From sequence record OV032902.1: DNA of 64,000 bases; one strand, written 5' to 3'. Of the stretch, positions 7,377 through 59,303 are shown piece after piece. The translations under genes were made by a program, and so were the position numbers. The notes beneath the pieces were generated by a model. It worked only from the letters and a program-made list of their open reading frames with translations, searched no databases and had not been told where the DNA came from. The stretch's first letter is position 1; every line of letters begins with the position of its first letter.

Positions 7377-8906
7377 ATGTTTACTGCTAAACTTAAAGCA
7401 ATACCAGCTGCAATGTCGCACAAGGTTGCTTATCCAATTCGTGCGCTACGTGATATTCCGACTGGCGAGTTTGTTAAGACTCCGCGTGGCAACTTCGTTA
7501 TGATGGGTGGCTATCATCCAACTAACTCAACCACTGGTCCAGGTAACTGTCACAAGACAGACGAAATCTTCTATGGTCCGATGAAAGTACTGAGTCATAT
7601 CCAAGCCTCTCAGGTTCTTGCTTATGATACAGAAAGCTCTCTAGGCTACCGTCGCTTTGAAGACCGTAAAGGCATGTTCTATGGCCTTGAAGAATTTGAT
7701 TTCTCTATGCAGCAATACCTAGATAACCCACGCTTCATGCTTTGGCAACGTGGTCAAATCGAAGGTGATGAATTCTTCGAAGCTATTAAAGAATATGGAC
7801 GTGAGCGTTCTAAAGATAAGAAGAACATGATTACTCTTCCTATCTGTGACCCTGCGGGCAACCCTATCCGTATCCTTGCTCCATCAATTGTTGTAATCGA
7901 TTCTCTATCTGCGATGTCTGCATCATCTATCCAAGAAAAGATTGTTGACAAGAACGCAGTAGGTGACTCTGGTCAGAACACAGTCTTCATGAAAGACGGT
8001 GCAATGAAAACTCAGCTTATCACACAGCTTCCTGTTTGTACAGCTAAGTACGGCATGCACTTCGCTATGACTGCACACATTGGTGACCATATCCAAATGG
8101 ACCAATATGCACCTAAGCCACTTTCTCTACAGTTCTCTAAGAACGGTACTAAGCAGAAAGGTGTTCCACAGAAGTTCCAGTTCATTAACGACTTCGTTGG
8201 TGAAATCTACAACGCTAAGCCACTTGTACACCCTGTTGACAAGTCGCCTAAGTACCCTTACTCAGAAGCTGACCGTGAGAAAGGTAATGACCTTATCCAA
8301 ATCACAGAAGTTAGCTCACGTAACAAGAACGGCCAGTCCGGTGTTGTTCGTCCTATCATCGTTTCACAGCGTGATGGTATTCTACCGGGCATGACTGAAT
8401 TTGATTACATCAAAGAAACTTGTAAGAAGTGGGGTATCTCTGGTAACAACACTACTTTCCACATGGACCTACGTCCTGATGTTAACATCGGTCGTACTAC
8501 AGTTCAGAAGAAGATTCGTGATGATTGGCGTCTAGATACAGCGATGCGTATCACTGCGGAAATGAACCAGATGCGTCTTCTATGGAAAGACATGGAAGAT
8601 ATTCTTTGTACTCCTGAAGAGCTGTACAACGACATCAAGAACATGGGCTACGATTGGGACATTCTTCTATTCACTCGCTACTGGTGGGTTCCAACAGAAG
8701 AAGAAAAGAACCAAGACTTCAACGAGCTTACTACTTATGACTTGCTAATGATGCGTAAAGGTCTTTACCATCCTTACTGGTTAGAAGATGACAAAGTTAC
8801 TGTTAAGAAAGCATGGCTAACTAATCTTCACAAAGAGAAAGAAAAGTTGGATGACATTGCAGAAGCTGCACCGCATCGTGCTAAGCTACTAGCTCAACTG
8901 AAATAA
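7377..8906 (+). CDS. uvsX: UvsX/RecA-like recombinase
   Basis: P-loop GPGNCHKT, YDTESS, Walker B IVVIDSLS. Next to RNase H, as in phiKZ. Confidence 0.85.
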   Translation: MFTAKLKAIPAAMSHKVAYPIRALRDIPTGEFVKTPRGNFVMMGGYHPTNSTTGPGNCHKTDEIFYGPMKVLSHIQASQVLAYDTESSLGYRRFEDRKGMFYGLEEFDFSMQQYLDNPRFMLWQRGQIEGDEFFEAIKEYGRERSKDKKNMITLPICDPAGNPIRILAPSIVVIDSLSAMSASSIQEKIVDKNAVGDSGQNTVFMKDGAMKTQLITQLPVCTAKYGMHFAMTAHIGDHIQMDQYAPKPLSLQFSKNGTKQKGVPQKFQFINDFVGEIYNAKPLVHPVDKSPKYPYSEADREKGNDLIQITEVSSRNKNGQSGVVRPIIVSQRDGILPGMTEFDYIKETCKKWGISGNNTTFHMDLRPDVNIGRTTVQKKIRDDWRLDTAMRITAEMNQMRLLWKDMEDILCTPEELYNDIKNMGYDWDILLFTRYWWVPTEEEKNQDFNELTTYDLLMMRKGLYHPYWLEDDKVTVKKAWLTNLHKEKEKLDDIAEAAPHRAKLLAQLK

Positions 8907-11531: not shown

Positions 11532-11540
11532 CTATATTAC
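11532..11540 (+). promoter_or_regulatory. Early promoter motif CTATATTAC
   Basis: Identical copies at 46760, 51067 and 58041, all intergenic and on the + strand. Matches the TATATTAC early promoter known from phiKZ. Confidence 0.7.
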
Positions 11541-21732: not shown

Positions 21733-21799
21733 GACATTCCCCTTAAATTCAGTGTATGGTCTATTTGATTTGACCGCTTCCGAAACCAGGAGACATCCA

Positions 21800-23449
21800 A
21801 TGTCAAAACCCAAGTTAAAGTTAAGGAATGTTCCCTTTAACATTTCGCTGCTAACAAACAATCGTGCAGCAGCAACCAGTAACCTTCTTTCGGTGAAATC
21901 TCTAGCATTGATGGACCATCTTTCTTCAGACTTTCACCAGCATGGACTTTACTCAACAGTTATCTTTGGACAACAAGGCACAAAAGACCGTGACCGTCGT
22001 CGAAGCTACGTTGACTTGAAAGTTCCAGTATTTAACCCAGTATACTTTAAAGAACTGAAGCGACTCAAATCGCTATACGCTGACATCATCCTTGGTCGTG
22101 CCTATGCTAACTTTGACGAAAAAGAAAAAGACTTCGTTCGTTCTAAAGATGGCATCCTAGATGGCGAGACTGGTTTTGCATTCTTTGTTAAGCATTTTCC
22201 TAAGCTTGCATTCAAGCAAGGCGAATCGAAAGAACGTCAGTTACGTATCGAGGTTCTTGAAACGTATCGTAATGTTGCGCTTACAGATTTCATATTTGTA
22301 ATTCCTGCTGGTCTTCGTGACGTACAGTTCGATGAGAACGGTCGTCCAGTTGAAGAAGAGATTGGCCCGCTTTACCGTAAAGTTATCTCGGCTACGAATA
22401 CGATTCCTGACAACATGCCTGATAAAGAGAATCCTCTTTTAGATGGTCCACGTCGTTCTATTCAGATTGGCCTCAATGAGATCTATGAACACATCCTGAA
22501 TATCCTGTCTGGTAAGAAAGGCTTTATCTCAGGCAAGTTTGGTTCTCGTCGTGTATTCGGCACAACTCGTAACGTACTTACCTCGATGGAAACGTCATCT
22601 GCTGTTTTAGGTGATGCTAAGCAACCTGACTTAAGTACAACCATTAATGGTCTATTCCAGTTCATTAAAGGCGTTGAGCCTATCCTTGGTCTTTACGAAA
22701 TTAAACAATACTTCCTGCGTGAATTCTTTGAAGACATTGACACAGAAGTACAACTTATCAACCGCAAGACTTTGAAAGCCGAACCGGTTGTTATTTCCTC
22801 ACGTCAGCGTGACAAGTGGGGAACTAAAGAAGGCATTCAGAAACTGATTAACGGTTACAAGAATGTTAAGACTCGTCACAAACCTGTCTTTATTGACGGC
22901 TACTACCTGAAGCTTATTTATCAAGACGATAAGTACTTCCGCGTAATGAACAGCATTGACGAGTTACCTGCTGGTTGGGATAAAGCTAAAGTACGTCCTA
23001 TGACTTGGACGGAAATGTTCTATCTACATGCTGAGCGCATTATGCCTCGCACTCGTGTATTCAATACACGTTACCCAGTAACAGGTCTAGGTTCTACGTA
23101 TCCTTCTGAAGTATATCTGAAAACAACCATCACTGGTCTACGTCTAACGGAACTAGATGAGAACTGGAATCCAACTGAGAAAGAAGTACTTGAGTTTCCT
23201 CGTACTCTTGAGAAGATGGCTTTCCATGAATCAATGGTTGTTCATCCGTCGTTCCTTGGTCCACTAGGTGCCGACTTCGATGGCGATATGCTGTCTTGTA
23301 ACTACGTTTGGTCTAAAGACTCTGTGGCGGAAGTAGATGCCCTCCTAGGTAGCTGGGAAAACTATCTATCTCCATCAGGTGGTCTGACTTATGATTCTAT
23401 GAACGATGTAACCGAATGGGTTCTATCATTCATGACTGGCTTTGAGTAA
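21800..23449 (+). CDS. Virion RNA polymerase beta' subunit, catalytic piece (phiKZ gp180-like)
   Basis: Catalytic ADFDGD motif and KKGFISGKFGSRRV. AGGAG RBS before MSKPKL. Confidence 0.9.
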   Translation: MSKPKLKLRNVPFNISLLTNNRAAATSNLLSVKSLALMDHLSSDFHQHGLYSTVIFGQQGTKDRDRRRSYVDLKVPVFNPVYFKELKRLKSLYADIILGRAYANFDEKEKDFVRSKDGILDGETGFAFFVKHFPKLAFKQGESKERQLRIEVLETYRNVALTDFIFVIPAGLRDVQFDENGRPVEEEIGPLYRKVISATNTIPDNMPDKENPLLDGPRRSIQIGLNEIYEHILNILSGKKGFISGKFGSRRVFGTTRNVLTSMETSSAVLGDAKQPDLSTTINGLFQFIKGVEPILGLYEIKQYFLREFFEDIDTEVQLINRKTLKAEPVVISSRQRDKWGTKEGIQKLINGYKNVKTRHKPVFIDGYYLKLIYQDDKYFRVMNSIDELPAGWDKAKVRPMTWTEMFYLHAERIMPRTRVFNTRYPVTGLGSTYPSEVYLKTTITGLRLTELDENWNPTEKEVLEFPRTLEKMAFHESMVVHPSFLGPLGADFDGDMLSCNYVWSKDSVAEVDALLGSWENYLSPSGGLTYDSMNDVTEWVLSFMTGFE

Positions 23450-35826: not shown

Positions 35827-37857
35827 TTATGAACTCAAACGAGCCACAGTGATGTTGTACTGACCAACCGTACGCATAGGGTCAGCTGCACAGTTAACAT
35901 CCAGAGCCCAGCTAAAGCCACGCTGTGAATCATCAGGTGTGATAACTGTTTCACCAGTTACTACCATCTTACCTGCGAACTTACCTTCGATCAGTTCAGC
36001 CCAATCGTCGTTAGATTGATCAACGAACTCTGCTTCAGGAAGTGTAGAACCAGTATTGATCGACCAATGGTACTTAGCTAGACGCTTAATGAACGTTACG
36101 ATCTTAACGTATAGCGTCGAGTTCAACACAGAAGTGTCGTCTTCGTACGCAGTCTGGTATGCTGGCCAGAATACTTCTGAAGTAGTACGCAATTGTGGAT
36201 AGTTGATACCAGTCTTCCAGTACAGGTCTTGAACTGTGTTTGACTTGTATGTGTGAGTCAAGTGAATAACACGAGATAGTGCGTTGTTGTCACGATCAGT
36301 GTAGTCATCTTCAATAGATAGTACACCAGAACCCGCACCTGCGAATGCTGCGTATTTAACAGCAACGTCTAGGAACGAAGTACAACGACGCTTGAAGATA
36401 GAACCTGCGTCCTGACCTTCAGAACCCCAGATATTGAAACGACATTGTTGTGTGCCGTGTACAACTGATTCTGGAGTCAATAGACCGCGAGCTTGCAATG
36501 CAAGACCGATGTTTAGCTCGGTAGCGATTGAATGAGGCGGTTGAGAAGCGATAAACGTACAAACATCAACAGTGATGTCGTCACGCTTAGCCATGGTATC
36601 CAGCATTGCGTACTTGGTATCAAGTTCGAAGCCAGAATCATGGAAGCCAGAGAATGGGTATTGTGCCCAAGAGTTCAATGGCTCATCTGGGTTATCCCAG
36701 TCGCTTTCTAGGTGAGCACGTACTAGGCTATCTAGCTCTGCTTCAGAAACAGTACCATCAGCACCACCCATTAGGTAGTTTACTGTAGCGCCGTCAGCAG
36801 ATAGAGAGTTAGCAACTAGTGGACCTTGTTGGATTGCTTTGTAAGCACGACCCATGTAGTCAAGTTCACCGAATAGGTTCATTTCTTCAGGAGCAGTTAC
36901 AAAAGAACCAGCTACCGCAGACTCTGCATCAAACAGTAGTTGTTGAACTGCTGCGATGTTAGCGCTGTAGAAATGAATGTCGTCAATAGGACCATGACGA
37001 GGAACGAAACCTGGAGTAACGTCTTCGTACGCAGACTTGATCGCACGGTAGTCGTAAGTTTCGTTTGTCTTAGTGTTAACAACACCATCTTTGAAAGAGA
37101 AGTCAACTGACTCAGCTTGAAGAAGGGTATTGATCACTACTGGAGTTGCACCTGGCTTGCTGCGCTCCAACCACGCAAAGCGGTATAGGATAGCTGCGTT
37201 ATCAGTCTGTGCGAATTCGCTAGATGGCTGTGCACGATTAGCGTTTTCTTGAGATAGACGGAAGCCTAGGTTGTTACCGTATTCACCGATGTCTGCAATC
37301 ATGCCGACCAGTGGGTAGATTTTCGATACTTGACCAGTGTTACCTGTCCAAGTGCCATCCATTACAACTTGTTGGTTCCAGTTGTACATGTCTACGCCTT
37401 CAACGTAAACGAAACGCACTAGGTAACCAAGCTGAGTAGCACCAGTATCAACGCGGTTGCCGTTGATGTCTACCTTGTATTCGCCGTTAGGCATTACTTC
37501 GTAAACTGGGTTCTCGTTCTCTACGATTTCAATCGCAAGTACAAGTACAGGAGCTTCAGCGTCGTCAGCTACTAAGCGACGACATGCAATCAAGTTACCT
37601 TGACCAGCTGTAGCCATAGCCATAGCTGTCTGGTGAGAATAGAACTTACTAGTCTCTTGGAAAGTTTCAGAACCGTAGTGAAGAGCCGCCATACCACCAG
37701 TCATGAACTGAGTAGTAGTTTTACCTTTCTTCGCCATAAACATGTATTTCGGACAGTTCTGAGGGATGGCTTCCGGAGTTACCGGAATAGTGCTACCTGA
37801 AACGTCTTTAATACCGTCAAGGTAAGGACGTGGAGTAGCTAATGTGATATTTGCCAT
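35827..37857 (-). CDS. Tail sheath protein (phiKZ gp29-like)
   Basis: 676 aa from MANITLATP with GAGG RBS. Size, YPFSGFHDSGF segment and synteny fit. Confidence 0.8.
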   Translation of the reverse strand: MANITLATPRPYLDGIKDVSGSTIPVTPEAIPQNCPKYMFMAKKGKTTTQFMTGGMAALHYGSETFQETSKFYSHQTAMAMATAGQGNLIACRRLVADDAEAPVLVLAIEIVENENPVYEVMPNGEYKVDINGNRVDTGATQLGYLVRFVYVEGVDMYNWNQQVVMDGTWTGNTGQVSKIYPLVGMIADIGEYGNNLGFRLSQENANRAQPSSEFAQTDNAAILYRFAWLERSKPGATPVVINTLLQAESVDFSFKDGVVNTKTNETYDYRAIKSAYEDVTPGFVPRHGPIDDIHFYSANIAAVQQLLFDAESAVAGSFVTAPEEMNLFGELDYMGRAYKAIQQGPLVANSLSADGATVNYLMGGADGTVSEAELDSLVRAHLESDWDNPDEPLNSWAQYPFSGFHDSGFELDTKYAMLDTMAKRDDITVDVCTFIASQPPHSIATELNIGLALQARGLLTPESVVHGTQQCRFNIWGSEGQDAGSIFKRRCTSFLDVAVKYAAFAGAGSGVLSIEDDYTDRDNNALSRVIHLTHTYKSNTVQDLYWKTGINYPQLRTTSEVFWPAYQTAYEDDTSVLNSTLYVKIVTFIKRLAKYHWSINTGSTLPEAEFVDQSNDDWAELIEGKFAGKMVVTGETVITPDDSQRGFSWALDVNCAADPMRTVGQYNITVARLSS

Positions 37858-38078
37858 TTTGGTTTCCTCTAGAATTCTAAAGAGTAGTTTAAATTTAAAC
37901 CTCTGCATTCAGCAGAATCGAAACGCTTAGGACGAATCGAATAGGGTGTCCCAGTTCCCGAAGCCTAAGCTGAAACGGGGACATAGACCTATACAATTGG
38001 ATGGATATAGGTACTAAAATGACACGCCGAACAAATAAGCTTATTTAAATATTTTACGTAAAATCCAGGAGAACAAAA

Positions 38079-43273: not shown

Positions 43274-45439
43274 ATGATTCTTTATTTATCAGATTGGAAG
43301 AAGTATCCAACTGCGATCGTGGATTACGAGACCAAGAATACTTCATTCATTGATCTGGCAGAGACTTATCGAAAGATGGGCATCGTGAACTGTATGTTTC
43401 CTCTGGCACTTATTCAGCCAGAACTACAAGGCGTCGACCCTTTCTCTCCTGATCTTACGCTTCATCAAAAAGTAATGATTGCCAACGAGGCTAAATATAA
43501 CCCGTGGTATTATCTTCGTGAAATTGCTCGTGTTCCTGTATCGGGCTCGCCAGAACCAACTATGTATCTAGCTAACCGTGCAAACGTAGCAATGATGTGG
43601 TGTTTCCTGAATGGTTTCGACTACGCTAACATCATGCCTCGTCAGTGCGGTAAGTCAGTAGGTGCGGACGTTTTGAACAACTGGTTGATTCACATCGCTG
43701 GTAACAACACAGTTATCCAGCTGTTTACTCACTCGAACAAACTACGTAATGCGAACGTTAAGCGTCTAAAAGAAATCCGTGACCTATTACCGGAATACCT
43801 TAACTTCTTTGTTCCTGGTGTTGACCCAGATAACCAAGAACGTATTGCGTGTAAAGCATTGGGTACTGAATACCTCACATCTGTAGCACAGAAAGATAAA
43901 GATGCTGCACATAACGCGGGCCGTGGATTGACGTCTCCGTGTATCCAGGTGGATGAGGGTCCATTCTGTCCTAACATTCATATCAGTCTTCCGGTAGCAC
44001 TTGGTTCAACCGGCGCAGCACGAGACTGGGCAAAAGAACGTGGCACATTCATGGGGAACATCTTTACTACAACCGCTGGTAAGCGAGATAGTGAAGAGGG
44101 TGGTTACATGTACGACCTAATCCATGATGGCATGTACTGGAATGAACGCATTCTGGATTGTCACGGCAAAGAAGCTGCTGAGGCCTTCGTAAGAACTAAC
44201 TCGAAGAACAAAGACCTATTGATGGTCAATGGTACTTTCTCGGCACTGCAAATCGGTAAGACACTTGCTTGGCTACGTGAGAAGATTGCAAACGCCCGTG
44301 GTTCTCGTGAAGATGCGGAACGAGATTATTTGAACATCTGGACATCTGGTACAGATAGTTCTCCTCTAGAAACTTATCTATTGGAAATCATCCGTCAGTC
44401 TGAGAAGGACCCACTGCATACCGAAGTATCTAAAGAAGGATACATGCTTAAGTGGTTTATTCCTCAAGATGAAATTCCACGCCGTATGAACTCTACTCGT
44501 TTAGTTATGACCATCGACTCGGCAAACATGATCGGTAAAGATGGTAACGCGATGACTATCATGGACTTAAAGACTATGGAAGTTGTTGCGACATCAAACA
44601 TTAACGAGGGTTCACTATATCGTTACAACGACTGGATATTCCGATTACTGGCTACCTATGACCGCATGACATTGATCATGGAAAACAAATCATCTGCACA
44701 AGGTATCTTTGATGCTGTTGCTGCTAAGATGATGGCTATGGGTATGAATCCATTCCGTCGTATGTTTAACCGCATTGTTAACGATCGTGCTTCTAATGAG
44801 AAAGCATATACTGAACTTCTTAACCGTGAGCGTCAAGGCATTATTACTGATGACTTCTATGAACGCTACAAGAAGAAGTTTGGTTTCATGACTACTGGTC
44901 TATCTCGTCATACTCTATACGGCGAAGTATTCCAACGTGCTGCTAAGACAACAGGTCACCTAATCTCTTCTGAGGAACTAAGTCGACAAATCCGTGGACT
45001 TGTTATGAAGAATGGTCGAGTAGACCACGAGAAAGGCAAGCATGACGATATGGTAATCTCTTGGCTAATGGGTCATTGGTTTGCTACGTCTGCTGTTAAC
45101 TTGGCATTCTACGGAATCGAACCTGGACTTGTTCAGTCACTTGTATCTGAGGCTGGTGCTACAGTATCGAAAGAAGAACTGGCACACCGCAAAGAACAAG
45201 AAGCTATCATGCAGCAAATCGCGTTCCTTAAAGATCAACTGGCTGAGACTGGTAATGATCTAATGAAACGAGCTGCTGAACTTCGTATTGCTAAACTTGC
45301 CGCTAAACTAGATGACAGCGACCAAGATAAAGTAATGGAAGAACTACTTAACCGTACTCGTGAACAACAGGCAGAGAATCAATCTCTAGCAGATGCTGTT
45401 CGCAAACGTAAACAGCAGAAAGCTGTTGGTTGGTATTAA
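43274..45439 (+). CDS. terL: Terminase large subunit
   Basis: NPWYYLRE, Walker A MPRQCGKS, Walker B IQVDE, C-terminal GKHDDMVIS nuclease motif. Confidence 0.92.
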   Translation: MILYLSDWKKYPTAIVDYETKNTSFIDLAETYRKMGIVNCMFPLALIQPELQGVDPFSPDLTLHQKVMIANEAKYNPWYYLREIARVPVSGSPEPTMYLANRANVAMMWCFLNGFDYANIMPRQCGKSVGADVLNNWLIHIAGNNTVIQLFTHSNKLRNANVKRLKEIRDLLPEYLNFFVPGVDPDNQERIACKALGTEYLTSVAQKDKDAAHNAGRGLTSPCIQVDEGPFCPNIHISLPVALGSTGAARDWAKERGTFMGNIFTTTAGKRDSEEGGYMYDLIHDGMYWNERILDCHGKEAAEAFVRTNSKNKDLLMVNGTFSALQIGKTLAWLREKIANARGSREDAERDYLNIWTSGTDSSPLETYLLEIIRQSEKDPLHTEVSKEGYMLKWFIPQDEIPRRMNSTRLVMTIDSANMIGKDGNAMTIMDLKTMEVVATSNINEGSLYRYNDWIFRLLATYDRMTLIMENKSSAQGIFDAVAAKMMAMGMNPFRRMFNRIVNDRASNEKAYTELLNRERQGIITDDFYERYKKKFGFMTTGLSRHTLYGEVFQRAAKTTGHLISSEELSRQIRGLVMKNGRVDHEKGKHDDMVISWLMGHWFATSAVNLAFYGIEPGLVQSLVSEAGATVSKEELAHRKEQEAIMQQIAFLKDQLAETGNDLMKRAAELRIAKLAAKLDDSDQDKVMEELLNRTREQQAENQSLADAVRKRKQQKAVGWY

Positions 45440-46697: not shown

Positions 46698-46759
46698 GAT
46701 GTCTCCCTCGGTGGCTGTGTTTTTACTATACTATTTAACGATTGAATGATTCCCTATCT

Positions 46760-46768
46760 CTATATTAC
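46760..46768 (+). promoter_or_regulatory. Early promoter motif CTATATTAC
   Basis: See the copy at 11532. Confidence 0.7.
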
Positions 46769-46851
46769 CAATATGGATGTCCAGTGATAAACTCATATAT
46801 GCTTGCGAGTATATATCATGATTATCATTTTACTAAACTAAGGAAACTATC

Positions 46852-48026: not shown

Positions 48027-49061
48027 ATGTCTTGGGGAAATCAACGTCGTGGAGGCGGCGGTCGCCGTGGTGGTGGTAACTTTACACCTAAGCCTCGTCC
48101 ACAACTACCAAAAGAACACGAACTTCATCCACTAGCGGAAATCGCATGTAAGCACGAAAACAAAGCTCTGTTACGTGACTACGGTACACGCGGTGAAGAA
48201 GTATCTAAAGAAACTGTTATCTTGGATGGTGACTCTCAACGTCGTCCTATTCCTGTTCCAGTTGCTGCAATGTTCAACACAATGCAATTTGGCGTTCCAA
48301 TGAATCACCCTGAGTTTCCTTCTATCCAGAAGTTCAATACTCTAGGCGAATCAAACGCTTACTATGCTCGTTACCAATCTCCTATCATGTGGATTCATAA
48401 CGACGAAAACAATGACTTCCGTCATATCCCTGGTTTTACTCGTTACGTTGTCGATAAGCATCGTCGCATTCTAAATGCACACAACGGTATGAAAGTAGAG
48501 CCTATGTCTAAGTACATGATCGAACTTGTTCCAGATGGTCCGACTAACAAACTAGTTAAGACTTCTATTGATCAAGTAATGAACTTGGCATACACTGCAC
48601 TACCTGAAGACTTTATTGACTTCGGTTTCCGTACTTACTCACACGACTTCGGTTTGAATCTAGAAGGCGGTCAAGTAGGTTGGGTAGCTAAAGGTAAAGT
48701 AAAAGTTAAGAACAATGACGTTGGCATGGTTGCTGAATACAGTAACTTACCTATGTTCATGAAAACTTCTATTGCACCTAAGGACTTCCAAATCATGCAA
48801 GATATCAACCAACAAGCTTGGAAAGGCTTTAATGGTGGTGTTATCAATGCTGGTCCTTATTCTATCCGTGAATCACTTCCATTTGTTCAACCACCTGAGT
48901 TACCTCGCGTCGGCCAAACAGAAAGTGCACCACAACAAGATTCTTTTGATACAGCTCCACAAGAGCAACCTCAACAGCAATCACAACCACAGCAACAACA
49001 GCAGCAACAAGCGGCTCCTCAACAAACTGAAGACATTAGCTTCGACGATATTGAGTTTTAA
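48027..49061 (+). CDS. Putative nucleic-acid-binding protein: RG-rich N-terminus, NUMOD4-like segment, Q-rich linker, SSB-like acidic tail
   Basis: MSWGNQRRGGGGRRGGG; FRHIPGFTRYVVDKHRRI; QQQQQQQAAPQQTEDISFDDIEF. AAGGAG RBS. Confidence 0.6.
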   Translation: MSWGNQRRGGGGRRGGGNFTPKPRPQLPKEHELHPLAEIACKHENKALLRDYGTRGEEVSKETVILDGDSQRRPIPVPVAAMFNTMQFGVPMNHPEFPSIQKFNTLGESNAYYARYQSPIMWIHNDENNDFRHIPGFTRYVVDKHRRILNAHNGMKVEPMSKYMIELVPDGPTNKLVKTSIDQVMNLAYTALPEDFIDFGFRTYSHDFGLNLEGGQVGWVAKGKVKVKNNDVGMVAEYSNLPMFMKTSIAPKDFQIMQDINQQAWKGFNGGVINAGPYSIRESLPFVQPPELPRVGQTESAPQQDSFDTAPQEQPQQQSQPQQQQQQQAAPQQTEDISFDDIEF

Positions 49062-49225
49062 TATAATACCTGTCTCCTTCGGGAGGCAGGTAGTTCTTCT
49101 TATTTTTTTTTTTTGCCAAAAAAAAAAAGCTTCCCGACCCGAAGGCCAGGAAGAAAGATTTTAACCACTGGGAGAACAACAATAGTTTCCTATTGCCTCA
49201 TGTTCAACGACTAATAAAAGTCATA

Positions 49226-50776
49226 CTATTTGGTTGCAAGAAGGAAAGTTTCTATAGCGAACAGATCTTCTGGGTTTGCACCATAGACCGTCATAATGTT
49301 ACCGTGACGCGGTTCAGCTAATAGCGCACCCTTCTCTTCAAAGATATCGTTGTTTAGAACATGATGGATTATACGCACCTTAGGTGACTTACCAGTAACA
49401 TAAGCATCAAGTGCATTTAAGAATGCCTCATGTTGACGTACAGTAAAATCACGTTCCGCCACATATACTTTCTTGAATTGTACCTGAGATGCATTTAGAA
49501 TATGGAACATACCGGTACTCTGCATCAACTGCATACCTTTGGTGAAAGTAGGAAGATGATACAATAGATCATCAATGTGTACAGGTTTAACATCTAATGG
49601 GAAAAGACCTTCGCCACAGATTGCTAGATTCCCGCCTAAACGATATGCTTTGTCATAAGCATGGATGACAGGTATTTCGTTATCGCTTTCGTGTTTAAGG
49701 AAAACAAGAGATGCAGTATCTTCTTCTCTTTCAACTGGAAGAGAATAGTAAAGATTTGACATTTCATCAACGAGAGTATCGAACCCACCTTTCTTTCTAA
49801 GCATCTGACGAATAACCAGTAGATCGACCGGATGCATCTGTTGACGTTCAATCCAACCTTTCATCAAGAAAACAATTCGATCTGCATGTGCGTCTGACAA
49901 GAAGTCTGTTAGACCAACTTGAAAACGAACGCGCCATTCTTCATATGACATAGAGCCACTAAAGAACATGTGTTCCATGAACTTAGCATTTTGCTGTAGT
50001 TCTTTACAGTATACCTTAGAAGGGAATGTAACGCCTTTGGAGTAATTGATTGCTACATGGATACTACCTGCCGCATTCCAATCGAGCTGATTGATCTCGT
50101 TAAGTATACGGAACATCATTGGAACTTCATTAGGTTCACCACGGTAGCCTTTCACAATACGCAGACATGCGTCTTGTACATCATCACTGCCACGCAAATG
50201 CAAGCGACGTACAAGATTACGGTGGCTAAATGTAATGCTTTCTTTTTTAAGTGAATTTTCACGAAACGTCACCGTTACCTTTCTATTGATAAGAACATGC
50301 TCAACCATCTTACGAGGGTCCATCTGTAAATACCACTCACCAAGGATTCGTTTAACACTTCGTCCAAAGCCACGGTAGTACGAGATCAAAGCCGCAAAGG
50401 TTAAGATGTCTTTGCCGTTCATAGAGATAGCGACACCAGTATTCATTGCATAAGAGGTCAGCTTTTTATCTTCCGCTTTGGAAAGCTTAGCTAGTACATG
50501 CAGAGCATGATTAGTATATGCCCCTGCTTCAGAATAGATATGAGGGAGTTCGTTAATCATCTTGACGATATCCCAACCATCATTTTCTATTGCTTCATGA
50601 AAACCATTAAAGGCTCCATCATCGAAAACGCCATCCAGGTCAGCACGAAGAGGTAAGTTGCTGCCGGATACAATATAACGAAGGACGAGTTCTTTCGCGA
50701 TGATTCGATTTCTTTGCTCCAGCATTGACTTAAAAGTTGCCCAGCAAAAATCTTTTTGTTCTTTTGAAATTTCCAT
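49226..50776 (-). CDS. rsr: Divergent Ro60/Rsr (TROVE + vWA) RNA-binding protein
   Basis: 516 aa with colinear matches to recalled Ro60: LRYIVSGS, GFGRSVKRILGEWY, FSHRNLVRRLH, ALDAY..KVRII..LAEPRHGNIMTVYG. MIDAS DxSxS is not evident. Confidence 0.75.
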   Translation of the reverse strand: MEISKEQKDFCWATFKSMLEQRNRIIAKELVLRYIVSGSNLPLRADLDGVFDDGAFNGFHEAIENDGWDIVKMINELPHIYSEAGAYTNHALHVLAKLSKAEDKKLTSYAMNTGVAISMNGKDILTFAALISYYRGFGRSVKRILGEWYLQMDPRKMVEHVLINRKVTVTFRENSLKKESITFSHRNLVRRLHLRGSDDVQDACLRIVKGYRGEPNEVPMMFRILNEINQLDWNAAGSIHVAINYSKGVTFPSKVYCKELQQNAKFMEHMFFSGSMSYEEWRVRFQVGLTDFLSDAHADRIVFLMKGWIERQQMHPVDLLVIRQMLRKKGGFDTLVDEMSNLYYSLPVEREEDTASLVFLKHESDNEIPVIHAYDKAYRLGGNLAICGEGLFPLDVKPVHIDDLLYHLPTFTKGMQLMQSTGMFHILNASQVQFKKVYVAERDFTVRQHEAFLNALDAYVTGKSPKVRIIHHVLNNDIFEEKGALLAEPRHGNIMTVYGANPEDLFAIETFLLATK

Positions 50777-50806
50777 GGTTTGTCTCCTTAGGAAAAAATA
50801 ATAAGC

Positions 50807-50826
50807 AGGACGACCGAAGCCGTCCT
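50807..50826 (-). terminator. UUCG hairpin with U-rich tract just upstream of the Ro60 RBS
   Basis: Minus strand AGGACGGC-TTCG-GTCGTCCT, then GCTTATTATTTTTT. Confidence 0.6.
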
Positions 50827-50840
50827 ATCTTACTATCCCC

Positions 50841-50949
50841 TGAGCTAGTGCGCGGATAATACCTACGCAGTACCCCAGAGTAAACGAGCGAGGTTTGAGA
50901 ATGAGGCCAATTCGCCACGCCGGTATATGGCCACACTCTCTTCAGCTCA
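50841..50949 (-). ncRNA. Candidate Y RNA-like (tRNA-like) RNA upstream of Ro60
   Basis: 7 bp terminal stem UGAGCUG/UAGCUCA; internal stem GAGAGUG..GGCC/GGCC..CAUUCUC; 3' hairpin UGCGU-A-GG/CC-GCGCA. G-U pairs favour the minus strand. Confidence 0.5.
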
Positions 50950-51066
50950 ATTGTTCGGGTGTCTTAGTGGTTGTACATCCAGTAAGACTTGTACTTATGA
51001 AATTTTTAATTTAGAGGTCTATCTAAATAATTGGCCATGCACATTATTTTGAATGCAATTAGATTT

Positions 51067-51075
51067 CTATATTAC
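51067..51075 (+). promoter_or_regulatory. Early promoter motif CTATATTAC
   Basis: See the copy at 11532. Confidence 0.7.
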
Positions 51076-51111
51076 CATATTGCCTATTCACCTATAACAA
51101 AGGAGGTCGTC

Positions 51112-54665: not shown

Positions 54666-54889
54666 CTAACAGGGTAGTCTCTTCGGAGGCTATCCTTACC
54701 TCTTTCTTCTTAATCTTTTTTTTTTCATTTGGTTAAAAACATGACAGTCTAATTCTTTGGTTTGGGGGAACCTTCTAGGAGGGGGCAATTAGCGTTAATC
54801 TAAGCAAAGGTTAAGGGCCTACTAGAATAGTAGACTTAAGCTAGCTATAGATAGAAGCTAACTACCTACTAGAGAATACCTACTTGCCT

Positions 54890-55013
54890 AATTATGTAGG
54901 AGTAACTGGCTAACAAGTAAGACGACGACTTGATTAGCATGAAGAGCTTTTACTCCTTGTCTCCTTTGGGTAGCTCCTGGCCGAAAGGCTGGGAGTACTA
55001 TCTTTTATTTTTT
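54890..55013 (+). ncRNA. Array cassette 0: candidate sRNA (~115 nt)
   Basis: TAC-N10-AATTATGTAG; AGGAGTAA/TTACTCCT stem; unpaired TCTCCTTT; GAAA-loop terminator plus T tract. Confidence 0.6.
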
Positions 55014-55025
55014 ACGTCGTGGCGG

Positions 55026-55350
55026 AATATTATGAATCTCATGGAGTGACTCATCGAAAGAACTGTATAGCTCATACTCTACAGTCAGAGAAATTCCATT
55101 TTCGTATCATTTAACTAATAAGGGCATTGCTCTTTTTCGTTACTTGTATAGACTAACTGTAATTATCAGTCATTGGCTCTAGGGGACGGGAACATCCCTT
55201 AGACAAACCTTGCAGAAGATGAGTTTAATTTCGTAATAGTCCGAGCAGGACCATTGCAATTTAGCATCATTTAGATTAACCTCCATTCTTTTGCACAATA
55301 TATTGGGAAAGCCTCCTGCCTACGGGCAGGAGGTTATTCTCGATCTTTTT
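55026..55350 (+). ncRNA. Array cassette 1: candidate sRNA (~315 nt)
   Basis: TAC-N10-AATATTATG; stems ACTGTA/TACAGT and TCTAGGGGA/TCCCTTAGA; AACCTCCATT; TACG terminator. Confidence 0.6.
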
Positions 55351-55364
55351 ATACATGCAAGTAT

Positions 55365-55582
55365 AATAGTATGACAATCCTCCATCGTTTTGATTTTGTT
55401 AACTCAAAATTGGCATAGTTTGTCACTCTGAAAGTTGTTTATAGTTGTAATAGTAATCCAGCAAACTCACAAACATTTATTGTTCTGTAGTGTTGCTTCC
55501 TGTACCGCTGGATTATAGAGTAAGATGTAACGCTTCTCTATCTGCCTCCTGCCTTCGGGCAGGAGGTATTGTTCTTTTTTAT
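55365..55582 (+). ncRNA. Array cassette 2: candidate sRNA (~210 nt)
   Basis: TAC-N10-AATAGTATG; TGACAA/TTGTCA stem enclosing TCCTCC; TAATCCAGC/GCTGGATTA stem; TTCG terminator. Confidence 0.6.
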
Positions 55583-55592
55583 TGGGTCGTGT

Positions 55593-55785
55593 AATATTGT
55601 AGTAAACATTAGTCGTTTACTTTTACCTGAATTAAAGAATAATTAGTAGTCCCATAAAAGAAACAGATCTAGCCATTTGTCTTTCACCTGAACACACCAT
55701 GGGACTTTACACTCGCTAGTCAAGGCGATTGTGTCGAGCAACTGATATCTCTCTGGCCTTCGGGTCAGGGAGCTTATCAATTTTT
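55593..55785 (+). ncRNA. Array cassette 3: candidate sRNA (~185 nt)
   Basis: TAT-N10-AATATTGTAG; GTAAAC/GTTTAC and AGTCCCAT/ATGGGACT stems; TTCG terminator. Confidence 0.6.
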
Positions 55786-55798
55786 AACGCCTGCACCT

Positions 55799-56024
55799 AA
55801 TATTATAGTAAAGTCCTCCTGCATGATCAATTTATGTTGCTTTACGTTTGAACCTTCATGCTACCATAGCGGTTGTTTTGTTGTTTCTATTTTCATTATA
55901 AGTTCCTTAAGTTATTTGAGTACAACTCCTTCTGGTTGTTTGACTCGCGTTAGTACAGACGCGGTCAGAGTTAATGGGTGCTAACCTCCTGGCCTTCGGG
56001 TCAGGAGGATTAGTTTTATTTTTA
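55799..56024 (+). ncRNA. Array cassette 4: candidate sRNA (~220 nt)
   Basis: AAC-N10-AATATTATAG; GTAAAG/CTTTAC stem enclosing TCCTCCT; ACAAC/GTTGT stem with TCCTTCTG loop; TTCG terminator. Confidence 0.6.
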
Positions 56025-56035
56025 CTCATGTATCT

Positions 56036-56207
56036 AATATTATGAACTGCAATGGATCTCTTTCGATATCTTTCTGTTTTTCATTTATTAATTCTTGTTA
56101 TAAGTAAGTTGACTCCTGTGCGACTTATGGCTGAGGAAGTACAACCTCGTGCCTCGGGTTTAAGGTTACACCTCCTGCCTTCGGGCAGGAGGTGTAATTA
56201 TTTTTTA
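56036..56207 (+). ncRNA. Array cassette 5: candidate sRNA (~165 nt)
   Basis: TAC-N10-AATATTATG; TAAGTTG/CGACTTA stem with ACTCCTGTG loop; TTCG terminator. Confidence 0.6.
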
Positions 56208-56218
56208 CATCGTTGTGC

Positions 56219-56335
56219 AATAATGTAGTAAGGACCACAGCCATGATTCTTGCAAGTCTACGAGTACGACGTAGGCGATTCTCTTTGTCTTGGAAAGTCT
56301 CGGCCTTCGGGTCGGGACTAATCCTTTTATTTTTA
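56219..56335 (+). ncRNA. Array cassette 6: candidate sRNA (~110 nt)
   Basis: TAC-N10-AATAATGTAG; GTCTACG/CGTAGGC stem; TTCG terminator plus T tract. Confidence 0.55.
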
Positions 56336-56422
56336 CACCAAAATTAACGAAATAGTATGGAGTATATTTTATCACAGCGATAAGGTACTTCACATGTCTT
56401 TATCTAAAATAGGGTATAACTT

Positions 56423-57940: not shown

Positions 57941-58040
57941 GACTCACTCCTTATTTTCTCGTCATTTTCAACGGCGAGCCCTTATTATATGTAGGCTCAC
58001 ACTATTTGCCGTAATGTTGCAAATCATCGTATTTTGATTT

Positions 58041-58049
58041 CTATATTAC
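58041..58049 (+). promoter_or_regulatory. Early promoter motif CTATATTAC
   Basis: See the copy at 11532. Confidence 0.7.
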
Positions 58050-58080
58050 CAACTCGGTTATACTTTATTGGAGATAAGAT

Positions 58081-58403: not shown

Positions 58404-59303
58404 ATGGCTGAAACAACATTAGTTTTAGATCTCTATGATCGTGCACAGCGACTACAAAGTGGCTTGCCCTTCAATGAGTCCGAACTCGAAATACTCAATC
58501 GTGTCAAGTGGGATATGAACTTCCTGGTTGACCTATGTCACGTTGCGTATGCAGATGCTTTTGTCCGCATGCTTAACCAAAACATTCCTGGTCTTAATGC
58601 GTATGAGGCAGTACCTGACTTTATTGATGAAGGTATTGCTAACTTACTTGACTACCTGGCAGAAGCACAAGCAGAGATGACTCCACTTGCTGCTAAGGAA
58701 TATAAGAAGCGCGTTCAACCTATCAAGCAATTGGCTTTGACTTGGTTTTACGAAACAGTGGATGACTTACAAAAAGAAGTCTACAAGTTAGTTGGTTCAA
58801 ATCGTACCTTTGACTTATGGACATGTAAGCGTACCGACCCTGACAATCCAAACTATGCAATCTGTCAAAACGAAGGTGACTTCCGTATCCTTGAATGGCA
58901 GCAACAGCACTTGGATGAAGATGGCGTTTATCAGAAAGATGTTGACAATAAGGAAGAAGAGCGTTTGATCTATCATGCGGTTCCTCAATTCCTCACTGCC
59001 AAATCATTAAAGAACGCTACGTTCTATGTTATGGGCTTCGACCAGTTCTACAAAGAACAGGGATACGAAGGTGAAGCTATTCCGAATATTCCGGCGCATA
59101 CTACAGCAGCTATCTGTGACTTGGTCCAGAAGTTAGGTGGTAAAGCTAAGACATCGCTAGGAACTGACATTGAATATGTTATCCGTCCTGATGACAATTG
59201 TATGACCGAAGAACTTTGGTTGCGTACAAATGAAGTCGTTCGATTCGTACCGAACGTGAAATGGGTAACAGAGAGTCAGTTCGTCCAATACCTGGAGAAC
59301 TAA
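58404..59303 (+). CDS. Hypothetical protein with C-terminal BRCT-like domain
   Basis: LKNATFYVMG...LVQKLGGKAKTSLGTDIEYVI...KWVTESQF follows the BRCT pattern. Confidence 0.6.
   Translation: MAETTLVLDLYDRAQRLQSGLPFNESELEILNRVKWDMNFLVDLCHVAYADAFVRMLNQNIPGLNAYEAVPDFIDEGIANLLDYLAEAQAEMTPLAAKEYKKRVQPIKQLALTWFYETVDDLQKEVYKLVGSNRTFDLWTCKRTDPDNPNYAICQNEGDFRILEWQQQHLDEDGVYQKDVDNKEEERLIYHAVPQFLTAKSLKNATFYVMGFDQFYKEQGYEGEAIPNIPAHTTAAICDLVQKLGGKAKTSLGTDIEYVIRPDDNCMTEELWLRTNEVVRFVPNVKWVTESQFVQYLEN

What the first reader, a model, noticed from the sequence alone, without database searches (positions are those of the whole stretch)
49226..50776. Divergent Ro60/TROVE protein in a phiKZ-like jumbo phage
SEEN: colinear motifs matching Ro60 as recalled: LRYIVSGS (~LHRFLCFGS), GFGRSVKRILGEWY (~WGRALRKAIADWY), FSHRNLVRRLH (~WSHKDLLRLSH) and a vWA-type tail ending GANPEDLFAIETFL (~GFDTGALDVIRNF). 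The MIDAS DxSxS position reads VFLKHESD, so it looks degenerate. KNOWN: Ro60/Rsr rings bind Y RNAs and misfolded RNA ends, and can be tethered to PNPase; some phages encode them. INFERENCE: a phage RNA quality-control or protection factor that may also handle the neighbouring sRNAs or counter host RNA-cleaving defences.
Basis: partly seen in the sequence, partly recalled or inferred. Interest (0 to 1): 0.72.

Follow-up and report, generated by a model that had tools for sequence, protein, structure and literature searches.

The report
Divergent MIDAS-less phage Ro60 homolog
This jumbo Vibrio phage gene encodes a highly diverged relative of the ring-shaped RNA-binding protein Ro60. It has lost the protein's metal-binding site and its usual tRNA-like partner RNA, so it is an unusual variant of an already known kind of phage protein.

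Summary
Window 49226-50776 (minus strand) is an intact 516-aa ORF of Vibrio phage vB_VpaM_sm033, annotated 'hypothetical', and it contains every quoted motif. Pfam, PHROGs and PDB searches with the single sequence find nothing. A profile of its five-member clade recovers Ro60 proteins specifically from 1.84 billion sequences. hhalign against 62 true Ro60s gives 99.8% probability (E 1.3e-29) over residues 29-512. A confident AlphaFold model (pLDDT 88.8) matches only Ro60 structures at E <= 1e-3. So it is a full-length Ro60 homolog: a TROVE ring plus a vWA cap.

It is not canonical. All MIDAS residues, invariant in true Ro60s and kept in Thermus phage phiLo Ro60, are substituted or deleted. The K170/R174 basic pair is replaced by a predicted beta-hairpin. 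No YrlA-type Y RNA is present. The related phage BONAISHI carries a canonical Ro60 preceded by two YrlA RNAs at the syntenic position. In the same place, sm033 and four relatives share a different conserved structured non-coding leader that ends in a terminator hairpin.

Phage Ro60s are already well known (354 phage records), and close relatives are annotated 'TROVE containing'. I rate it a new variant of a known kind, of moderate interest. Function remains inferred.

The parts
49226..50776 (-). Ro60-like ORF, 516 aa plus stop (SM033_00186), intact
   Evidence: Clade profile vs 1.84e9 proteins finds Ro60s. hhalign prob 99.8%, E 1.3e-29. AF2 pLDDT 88.8. Foldseek top 13 hits are all Ro60.
49742..50707 (-). 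TROVE-like HEAT-repeat (ring) region, about aa 24-345. Keeps R135-G-F-G-R139, W148-Y149, H185-R186, R190 and H193. Net basic (pI 8.75; core aa 130-215 has pI 10.3).
50225..50287 (-). Clade-specific predicted beta-hairpin (aa 164-184). It replaces the KYxxRxGW segment that holds Xenopus K170/R174.
   Evidence: AF2 strands 166-173 and 177-184. Column mapping.
50138..50197 (-). Motif almost fully invariant in the clade, LRGSDDxQDACxRxxKGYRG (aa 194-213), with no counterpart in canonical Ro60
   Evidence: invariant columns of A1/A4; A3 column table
49229..49741 (-). vWA-like alpha/beta cap (aa 346-516) without a MIDAS. The DxSxS position is aa 358-365 (window 49682-49705).
   Evidence: hhalign runs to residue 512. 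MIDAS columns lost. Alternating beta/alpha secondary structure. Isolated vWF-A hits follow the Ro60 hits.
50793..51047 (-). Conserved structured non-coding leader or sRNA candidate directly upstream on the same strand. The 5' end is not mapped. It contains the GAGC...GCUC-closed domain (50886-50948), a second hairpin and the terminator hairpin.
   Evidence: fold z-score -4.55. GAGCTG, CCTCGCTC(R)TT and the hairpin are shared by 5 loci. No conserved ORF. No Rfam/YrlA match.
50806..50827 (-). Terminator-like hairpin plus U-run about 30 nt before the start codon. An equivalent hairpin is present in all 8 related loci, including BONAISHI.
49130..49153 (-). Terminator-like hairpin plus T-run downstream of the ORF. 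It faces a plus-strand terminator at 49067-49092.

Best explanation
The ORF encodes a strongly diverged positional ortholog of phage Ro60: a TROVE HEAT-repeat ring closed by a vWA-like cap. It is carried by a small clade of marine, phiKZ-like jumbo Vibrio phages.

Shown:
- full-length homology and fold;
- the gene is intact in eight genomes or contigs at one syntenic position (five in the close clade, three contigs for the two intermediate relatives);
- the metal-ion site (MIDAS) and the K170/R174 basic pair are lost;
- no tRNA-like YrlA RNA is present, although the syntenic canonical Ro60 of phage BONAISHI has two;
- a different conserved, structured, terminator-ended non-coding region takes its place.

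Inferred: the protein still works as an RNA-binding ring, because the most conserved basic TROVE motifs and the H187-equivalent histidine are kept. Its RNA partner has changed. The most likely partner is the RNA transcribed from its own upstream leader, either as a trans-acting RNP partner or as an autoregulatory site that controls read-through into the gene. As shown for other Ro60s, the complex would then bind or shield structured RNA ends, or modulate a host exoribonuclease such as PNPase.
For: Identity:
- A1 profile against 1.84e9 proteins gives 176 hits at E<=1e-3, mostly 510-580 aa and colinear.
- 62 of the 69 aligned sequences carry TROVE plus vWA_Ro60.
- hhalign gives 99.8%, E 1.3e-29, 462 columns, query 29-512.
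- The only PDB hit of the 4-sequence profile is Xenopus Ro60.
- AF2 pLDDT 88.8, pTM 0.87. All 13 Foldseek PDB hits at E<=1e-3 are Ro60, TM 0.5-0.68. An independent BFVD model of a 516-aa relative (35% identity) matches at TM 0.88.

Orthology: the flanking genes are homologous in BONAISHI, L008 and L009 and the gene order is the same.

Divergence:
- The MIDAS columns (D, S, S, T, T-D) are 97-100% conserved in 62 Ro60s and read K, E, gap, M, E, R in the window protein.
- phiLo Ro60 keeps them.
- K170/R174 become I163/V167, while H187 is kept as H193. H187S abolishes Y RNA binding (PMC11277228).

RNA:
- YrlA hits lie upstream of BONAISHI Ro60 (E 5e-11 and 3e-4). There are none in the window or in six related loci.
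- The leader fold has z = -4.55.
- Conserved blocks, a common architecture and some compensatory pairs occur in 5 loci whose proteins share only 32-40% identity.
- There is no conserved ORF.

Precedent: phiLo Ro60 binds two upstream Y-like RNAs and host PNPase (PMC12135203). Y RNAs lie within 4 kb of Ro60 genes on the same strand (PMC4201824).
Against: - No experiment or direct evidence of RNA binding exists for this clade.
- The clade is acidic overall (pI 6.0-6.7, against a median of 8.7 for true Ro60s). It has lost residues that I recall, but could not verify, as needed for misfolded-RNA binding (K170/R174). The H187 equivalent is F/F/Y in three of the five clade members.
- The leader lacks the GNCGAAN0-1G / CGAA signature in two of the five loci. 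Its long-range GAGC/GCUC stem is invariant, so it shows no covariation. Most compensatory changes lie in the terminator stem, which would covary in any case. Domain z-scores are modest, -1.8 to -2.5.
- The two intermediate loci (L008, L009) do not share the leader motifs.
- The promoter and the 5' end of the leader are not mapped.
- The AF2 model rests on an alignment dominated by canonical Ro60s; with only 4 clade sequences the pLDDT was 57.7.
Confidence: 0.6

Rival explanations
1. It is a functionally canonical Ro60 that works as in Deinococcus and Thermus phage phiLo. It would bind a Y RNA and tether or inhibit host PNPase (a RYPER-like complex), and the sequence divergence would be only drift.
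For: Full-length homology and fold. Phage precedent with upstream Y-like RNAs and PNPase binding. A same-strand non-coding RNA candidate lies directly upstream. H193 corresponds to the Y RNA-binding H187.
Against: No YrlA or other Y RNA model match at E<=10 in the leader, or at E<=1 in 11 kb around the gene and in six related loci, while the same search finds two in BONAISHI. No GNCGAAN0-1G in any of the five leaders. The MIDAS and the K170/R174 equivalents are lost, although even the divergent phiLo protein keeps them.
Confidence: 0.15
2. The upstream conserved element is only a cis-acting 5' leader of the Ro-like mRNA, for example a transcription attenuator or a stabilising hairpin. It would have no role as a partner RNA, and the protein's RNA targets would lie elsewhere (host or phage transcripts).
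For: The terminator-like hairpin sits about 30 nt before the start codon in all 8 loci, and no separate promoter is visible between the hairpin and the ribosome-binding site. Covariation is concentrated in the terminator stem.
Against: In BONAISHI the same position holds bona fide YrlA genes followed by the same kind of hairpin. This suggests the hairpin ends an RNA gene. Conserved blocks such as GAGCTG and CCTCGCTC(R)TT lie well upstream of the hairpin.
Confidence: 0.2
3. The protein keeps the Ro60 fold but no longer binds RNA. It has been recruited as a protein-binding scaffold or adaptor that uses the clade-specific invariant surface (aa 194-213) and the beta-hairpin insert.
For: Acidic overall pI. 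Loss of the MIDAS, K170/R174 and the N-terminal canonical motif. A clade-specific invariant motif and insert.
Against: The best-conserved columns shared with canonical Ro60 are the basic TROVE motifs: RGxGR, (K/R) at 142, SHR, R190. The core aa 130-215 has pI 10.3 and net charge +9. A conserved structured RNA sits in the Y RNA position.
Confidence: 0.05
4. The Ro60 resemblance is a chance match of a few motifs, and the ORF belongs to an unrelated family.
For: No hit for the single sequence in Pfam (E<=10), PHROGs or PDB.
Against: Profile, profile-profile and fold evidence all point to Ro60 only. Syntenic orthology to a Pfam-verified Ro60.
Confidence: 0.01

Closest known systems
Vibrio phage BONAISHI ORF49c ('RNA binding protein', AXH70790.1), a canonical phage Ro60
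   Same: Same syntenic position next to homologous neighbours. Same phage group; vB_pir03's announcement names BONAISHI as its closest relative. Same layout of non-coding RNA region, terminator hairpin, then gene. Alignable TROVE core (BLASTP E 2e-11).
   Different: BONAISHI passes Pfam TROVE and vWA_Ro60. It keeps all MIDAS residues, K170/R174 and H187, and it has two YrlA-type Y RNAs upstream. The window protein fails all of these except H187.
vB_pir03 QNI21009 and C-ZP2022 UKZ10947, 'TROVE containing domain protein'
   Same: True clade members: 36-37% identity over 97% of the length, both 516 aa, same synteny, same leader motifs, and the MIDAS likewise lost.
   Different: They are already labelled TROVE in GenBank, whereas the sm033 gene is 'hypothetical'. 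They have F instead of H at the H187-equivalent position.
Thermus phage phiLo phiRo60 (PDB 9KOP, 9L5Y) with Yrl1/Yrl2
   Same: A phage-encoded, sequence-divergent Ro60 ring with a vWA cap and non-coding RNAs encoded directly upstream. Foldseek E 4e-8 to 3e-7, TM 0.48-0.60.
   Different: phiLo keeps DVSGSM, the GGT threonine, the TD pair, KYK..RR and the histidine. Its Yrl RNAs carry the CGAA motif and were shown to bind the protein and host PNPase. None of this is shown here, and CGAA is absent from two of the five leaders.
Cellular Ro60/Rsr (Xenopus 1YVP, human 9NEN, Deinococcus 2NVO) with Y RNAs
   Same: Same two-domain fold (Foldseek E about 1e-11, TM up to 0.68). Shared RGxGR, WY and SHR..R..H motifs.
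   Different: About 11-14% identity over the structural alignments. No MIDAS, no K170/R174, a different N-terminus, a beta-hairpin insert, an acidic pI and no recognisable Y RNA.
Actinobacteriophage 'Ro-like RNA binding protein' genes
   Same: Phage-borne Ro60 homologs, 354 of 50,697 phage records. Several have YrlA RNAs (PMC4201824).
   Different: Those are canonical and easily recognised: 28-32% identical to BONAISHI over the full length. The window clade reaches them only through profiles.

Membership tests
Ro60/Rsr (TROVE + vWA_Ro60) | TROVE HEAT-repeat ring domain (Pfam PF05731) | tested here: met
   The direct Pfam scan gives no hit at E<=10. Homology is established by the profile search, by hhalign at 99.8% / E 1.3e-29 and by fold matches to Ro60 only.
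Ro60/Rsr (TROVE + vWA_Ro60) | C-terminal vWA-fold domain capping the ring (PF25045) | tested here: met
   The hhalign alignment continues to residue 512 of 516. The AF2 model has alternating beta/alpha over aa 354-513 at high pLDDT. Isolated vWF-A domains are the next Foldseek hits. There is no direct Pfam hit.
Ro60/Rsr (TROVE + vWA_Ro60) | MIDAS metal site DxSxS...T...D | tested here: not met
   These columns are 97-100% conserved in 62 Ro60s and read K, E, gap, M, E, R in the window protein. They vary within the clade. hhalign puts DVSGS opposite a gap. BONAISHI, Atu_ph07 and phiLo keep them.
Ro60/Rsr (TROVE + vWA_Ro60) | Basic pair equivalent to Xenopus K170/R174 (KYxxR). I recall its role in misfolded-RNA binding but could not verify it. 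| tested here: not met
   Columns 241 and 245 are K and R in 97-98% of true Ro60s. They are I163 and V167 here and non-basic throughout the clade.
Ro60/Rsr (TROVE + vWA_Ro60) | Histidine equivalent to H187 (needed for Y RNA binding; PMC11277228) | tested here: met
   H193 in the window protein and H in P0002, but F/F/Y in the other three clade members.
Ro60/Rsr (TROVE + vWA_Ro60) | Co-encoded Y RNA (YrlA RF02553, or the GNCGAAN0-1G stem) within about 4 kb on the same strand | tested here: not met
   No Rfam match at gathering score over the whole window, at E<=1 over 47-58 kb or at E<=10 in the leader alone. No motif in the five leaders. No tRNA-like gene. Positive control: two YrlA hits in BONAISHI, both below Rfam's 69-bit gathering score.
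Ro60/Rsr (TROVE + vWA_Ro60) | Binds Y RNA stems and single-stranded 3' ends; associates with PNPase | not testable with these tools
   Biochemical property; known for Xenopus, Deinococcus and phiLo proteins.
YrlA / Y RNA (for the upstream leader) | Covariance-model match, tRNA-like T and D arms, GNCGAAN0-1G | tested here: not met
YrlA / Y RNA (for the upstream leader) | Encoded next to the Ro60 gene on the same strand | tested here: met
   The leader at 50793-51047 is on the minus strand, directly 5' of the ORF. It takes the same place as the BONAISHI YrlAs.
phiKZ-like jumbo phage | Genome over 200 kb, phage multisubunit RNAP, AT-rich early promoter motif | tested here: met
   Genome of 320,253 bp. 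RNAP beta-like subunit, phrog_2986, E 2e-183. Five exact TATATTAC copies, all on the plus strand, three of them inside an identical 12-mer at operon starts. Chimallin and PhuZ were not found in the window: they were not searched beyond one ORF, which gave no tubulin hit.

The most novel reading that the evidence does not exclude
In this clade of jumbo Vibrio phages a Ro60 ortholog may have swapped its tRNA-like Y RNA for a new, unrelated structured RNA encoded in its own leader. At the same time it discarded the metal site and the basic pair. The result would be a new type of phage Ro-like ribonucleoprotein (or a self-regulating RNA-protein pair) whose targets differ from those of canonical Ro60. 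The sister phage BONAISHI would preserve the ancestral state at the same locus.
Probability: 0.25. Interest if true: 0.65.

Novelty: new variant of a known kind. Interest (0 to 1): 0.45.

Why it matters
Ro60 is a conserved RNA-surveillance ring. The roles of its MIDAS site and of its Y RNA partners are still unclear; the phiLo paper says the role of the MIDAS in Ro60 remains unclear.

Here one phage lineage offers a natural comparison at a single syntenic locus. BONAISHI has the canonical protein with an intact MIDAS and two tRNA-like YrlA RNAs. sm033, vB_pir03 and their relatives have lost the MIDAS, the K170/R174 pair and YrlA together, yet keep an intact, conserved gene and a different conserved RNA. 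This pattern suggests that the MIDAS, the basic pair and the tRNA-like Y RNA module are functionally linked, and it makes that link testable by structure and transcript mapping.

On the practical side, it supplies an annotation for a 'hypothetical' gene, and it shows that Pfam's TROVE and vWA_Ro60 models miss this clade. Phage Ro60s themselves are not new, so the finding refines a known theme.

Tried and rejected
**Searches that found nothing**
1. Single-sequence searches (Pfam at E<=10, PHROGs, PDB phmmer, PADLOC) gave nothing.
2. The word-indexed protein search found only 4 relatives. The viral-contig scan with the clade alignment found none.
3. ARAGORN and Rfam, at gathering score and at permissive E-values, gave no tRNA or Y RNA in the window.
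4. No conserved small ORF explains the leader. The leader motif CCTCGCTCRTT is unique in the window.
5. The ORF at 58404-59303 was checked for a tubulin/PhuZ domain because a related contig has one at that position. It gave no hit.
6. I could not obtain the primary Ro60 structure papers or reviews. The roles of K170/R174 therefore rest on my recollection and are marked so.

7. AlphaFold with only the 4 clade sequences gave a weak model (pLDDT 57.7).
I did not resend that sequence. I rebuilt the alignment from the window protein and search-returned proteins only (A6), and it ran.

**A reading I corrected**
9. I first read the invariant box TGGTAATATAGA as the promoter of the Ro-like gene. I rejected this. 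Its reverse complement contains the phiKZ promoter motif, it lies a constant ~35 nt from the divergent gene's start, and all exact copies face plus-strand operons.

In my reasoning I also compared the leader with generic tRNA-arm and Y RNA strings recalled from memory. None of these recalled strings is used as evidence. Only tool- or paper-derived motifs are.
Full report
**1. What is there**

The window is part of Vibrio phage vB_VpaM_sm033 (OV032902.1, 320,253 bp; window coordinate = record coordinate minus 124,000). At 49226-50776 on the minus strand lies an intact 516-aa ORF with an ATG start and an AGGAG ribosome-binding site. GenBank annotates it as 'hypothetical protein' SM033_00186.

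The gene is a single minus-strand unit between plus-strand operons. A terminator-like hairpin with a T-run follows it at 49153-49130, facing the plus-strand terminator of the convergent neighbour.

**2. Is it a Ro60?**

The single sequence finds nothing in Pfam (even at E<=10), PHROGs, PADLOC or PDB. Other evidence is decisive.

- tblastn finds two 36-37% identical proteins in Vibrio phages vB_pir03 and C-ZP2022, labelled 'TROVE containing domain protein'. It also finds weak matches to BONAISHI ORF49c and Atu_ph07 gp128, and Pfam confirms both of these as TROVE plus vWA_Ro60.
- Pairwise BLASTP aligns aa 69-260 with them (E 2e-11 and 9e-11). The GFGRSVKRILGEWY and FSHRNLVRRLH stretches fall on the corresponding Ro60 motifs.
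- The word-indexed search of 5.8 billion proteins returns only four relatives.
- A profile of the four-sequence alignment, scored against all 1.84 billion cluster representatives, gives 176 hits at E<=1e-3. Most are 510-580 aa and colinear from the N-terminus.
- Of 69 aligned sequences, 62 carry both Pfam TROVE and vWA_Ro60. The window protein, P0002 and P0005-P0007 each give no TROVE or vWA hit when scanned alone, and the vB_pir03 protein gives none either.
- hhalign of the five-member clade against the 62 true Ro60s gives probability 99.8%, E 1.3e-29 and 462 aligned columns, query 29-512 on template 35-528. This is full length and includes the vWA half.
- AlphaFold2 with only the clade alignment was weak (pLDDT 57.7).
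- Foldseek against the PDB returns 13 hits at E<=1e-3, and all are Ro60: Xenopus 1YVP/1YVR/2I91, Deinococcus 2NVO, human 9NEN and related entries, and Thermus phage phiLo 9KOP/9L5Y (TM 0.48-0.68). Isolated vWF-A domains follow.
- An independently computed BFVD model of a 516-aa relative at 35% identity, the length and identity expected for the vB_pir03 protein, superposes at TM 0.88.

The homology claim is therefore secure. One caveat: the confident model relies on an alignment dominated by canonical Ro60s.

**3. How it differs from Ro60**

Column counts on the 69-sequence alignment, with Xenopus numbering read from the HMMER alignment to 1YVP, show the following.

| Feature | True Ro60s | Window protein |
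|---|---|---|
| MIDAS positions (D, S, S, T, T-D) | 97-100% conserved in 62 sequences | K361, E363, gap, M415, E441, R442; variable within the clade |
| K170/R174 (KYxxR) | K and R in 97-98% | I163 and V167, inside a clade-specific predicted beta-hairpin (aa 166-184) |
| H179 | conserved | H185 |
| H187 | conserved | H193; H in one relative, F/F/Y in three |

- hhalign places the DVSGS motif opposite a gap. BONAISHI and Atu_ph07 keep all MIDAS positions, and so does the otherwise divergent phiLo protein.
- A review states that H187S abolishes Y RNA binding (PMC11277228). The role of K170/R174 in misfolded-RNA binding is my recollection only.
- The motifs R135-G-F-G-R139, K142, W148-Y149, H185-R186 and R190 are invariant in the clade and match the canonical consensus.
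- A stretch that is almost fully invariant in the clade, aa 194-213, has no canonical counterpart.
- The clade is acidic overall (pI 6.0-6.7, against a median of 8.72). The window protein's TROVE part is basic (pI 8.75), and its core, aa 130-215, is strongly so (pI 10.3, net +9).

**4. Evolutionary context**

All relatives sit in one conserved gene order: DUF7484 gene, small genes, an ORF-free gap, small genes, the Ro-like gene, three opposite-strand genes, a 405-aa gene and the terminase.

- The two more distant relatives P0006 and P0007 (E 5e-27 and 2e-23) occupy the same place, and they also lack the MIDAS.
- BONAISHI's canonical Ro60 is flanked by homologs of the window's neighbours: ORF47 at 35% identity (E 4e-60) and ORF45 (E 3e-6). 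The window gene is thus a diverged positional ortholog of a canonical phage Ro60.
- Canonical Ro60 is common in phages: 354 of 50,697 records, mostly actinobacteriophages annotated 'Ro-like RNA binding protein'.

**5. The RNA side**

Bacterial and phage Y RNAs usually lie within 4 kb of the Ro60 gene on the same strand. They carry GNCGAAN0-1G and, for YrlA, tRNA-like arms (PMC4201824). phiLo has two Y-like RNAs upstream of its gene (PMC12135203).

- Rfam finds two YrlA matches directly upstream of BONAISHI's Ro60 on the same strand: L003 3525-3636 (59.3 bits, E 5e-11) and 3323-3442 (35.8 bits, E 3e-4). Both score below Rfam's gathering cutoff of 69 bits. They lie in the gap between ORF50 and ORF49c, where the record lists no feature.
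- The same kind of search finds no Y RNA in the window at gathering score, at E<=1 over 47-58 kb, at E<=10 on the 361-nt upstream region alone, or in six related loci. ARAGORN finds no tRNA-like gene.
- Instead, the 335-nt region upstream of the ORF folds much better than shuffled sequence (z = -4.55).
- In five loci whose proteins are only 32-40% identical it keeps colinear blocks: GAGCTG, CCTCGCTC(R)TT and a GGACGGCC...GGTCGTCC hairpin with a U-run.
- Each locus folds into the same order of elements: a hairpin domain closed by GAGC/GCUC, a second short hairpin, then a long terminator hairpin.
- RNAalifold reports 9 pairs with compensatory changes, mostly in the terminator's lower stem and the second hairpin. 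The GAGC/GCUC stem is invariant and so uninformative.
- There is no conserved small ORF. None of the five leaders has GNCGAAN0-1G, and two have no CGAA at all.
- A hairpin with a U-run 20-40 nt before the start codon is present in all eight loci, including BONAISHI, where it follows the YrlAs.

The layout 'non-coding RNA, terminator, Ro gene' is therefore conserved, while the RNA differs. The more distant L008 and L009 loci do not share the leader motifs.

**6. A correction on the promoter**

I first took the invariant TGGTAATATAGA box (51066-51077) for the gene's promoter. Its reverse complement contains TATATTAC, the promoter motif reported for phiKZ (PMC7058600, Table 2). Early-promoter motifs of RNAP-encoding jumbo phages are AT-rich elements of about 10 nt centred near -10 (PMC7598289).

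All five exact TATATTAC copies in the window are on the plus strand. The three identical 12-mers lie 30-82 nt before the plus-strand operon starts at 46852, 51112 and 58081. The box therefore most likely serves the divergent gene.

The Ro-like transcript's own promoter is unknown. A shared AT-rich motif (AAATAGTATAG, AAATAGTGTGAG, AAAATAATGTGCA) upstream of the three minus-strand genes is a low-confidence candidate.

**7. Mechanism**

Shown: fold and homology, loss of the MIDAS, of K170/R174 and of YrlA, and a conserved structured leader.

Inferred: the protein is still an RNA-binding ring, because what it shares with Ro60 is mainly the basic TROVE core and because a conserved RNA sits where Y RNAs sit. 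Its likeliest ligand is the leader-derived RNA, as a partner or as an autoregulatory site. Downstream effects on structured RNA ends or on a host exoribonuclease follow only by analogy with Deinococcus and phiLo.

The rivals are a canonical RYPER-like function, a purely cis-acting leader, and loss of RNA binding. They are listed with their evidence. Nothing here supports a specific anti-defence role.

**8.

The ORF-free stretch near 54.7-56.4 kb holds at least six plus-strand terminator hairpins. Most are followed by a T-run and an AATATTAT or AATATTGT motif, giving units of roughly 90-300 nt.

- The gap is conserved in position in all relatives, but the unit bodies are not conserved in sequence.
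- The units lie on the opposite strand, 4-5.6 kb from the gene, and match no Rfam family.
- They are not good Y RNA candidates.

**9. Verdict**

Phage Ro60s are known, and close relatives are already labelled TROVE. New here is a lineage that has lost the MIDAS, the basic pair and YrlA while a syntenic sister phage keeps the canonical state. I rate it a new variant of a known kind, interest 0.45.

**Procedural notes**

I left that sequence out and did not resend it.
- I recalled generic tRNA and Y RNA strings in my reasoning. None of these is used as evidence.

Noticed in passing
window 54973-56320 (+ strand), inside the ORF-free stretch 54666-56422: An array of at least six terminator-like hairpins (54973, 55312, 55543, 55755/55985, 56164, 56296). 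Most are followed by a T-run plus an AATATTAT or AATATTGT promoter-like motif, giving small units of about 90-300 nt. The gap is kept at the same position in all relatives, but the unit bodies are not conserved. In vB_pir03 the region is annotated with many ORFs of about 30 aa, which look like over-calls. There is no Rfam or tRNA match.
   Followed up: partly
window 46759-46770, 51066-51077, 58040-58051 (also TATATTAC at 11533 and 51265): Three identical 12-mers read TCTATATTACCA on the plus strand and contain the phiKZ promoter motif TATATTAC. Each lies 30-82 nt before the first gene of a plus-strand operon, in a divergent intergenic region. They are probably early promoters for the virion RNA polymerase. 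BONAISHI has TGGTTATATAGA at the equivalent place.
   Followed up: partly
L003 (Vibrio phage BONAISHI MH595538.1) 3323-3442 and 3525-3636, + strand in the locus: Two YrlA-type Y RNA matches (Rfam RF02553; 35.8 and 59.3 bits, both below the 69-bit gathering score) lie between ORF50 and the Ro60 gene ORF49c. The record lists no feature there.
   Followed up: partly
window 48027-49061 (+): The convergent 344-aa neighbour starts with an arginine/glycine-rich run (RRGGGGRRGGG) and ends in a glutamine-rich low-complexity tail. It is syntenic with the Ro-like gene in all relatives, including BONAISHI ORF47 (35% identity). It has no Pfam or PADLOC hit. An RGG-like N-terminus next to an RNA-binding ring may be worth a look.
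   Followed up: no
window 51035-51047, 46720-46731, 57990-58001 (- strand): A shared AT-rich motif (AAAATAATGTGCA, AAATAGTATAG, AAATAGTGTGAG) lies upstream of the three minus-strand genes of this region, and it resembles the motifs before the array units. It may be a second promoter class. This rests only on inspection by eye, and the coordinates are approximate.
   Followed up: no
window 49067-49153: Back-to-back terminator hairpins on the two strands (49067-49092 plus, 49153-49130 minus) flank a run of A/T. They close the convergent pair formed by the 344-aa gene and the Ro-like gene.
   Followed up: no
L008 727-1695 (JGI 3300068283 contig) vs window 58404-59303: A related contig carries a tubulin/TubZ-like gene (weak precomputed Pfam hits) beside the DUF7484 gene. 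The ORF at the corresponding place in the window (299 aa) gives no tubulin hit in Pfam.
   Followed up: partly
window 21752-23449 (+) and other large ORFs: The window also encodes an RNAP beta-like subunit (phrog_2986), a tail sheath (35827-37908), an RNase H-like ribonuclease (5036-6400), a UvsX-like recombinase (7377-8906) and the terminase (43274-45439).
   Followed up: partly
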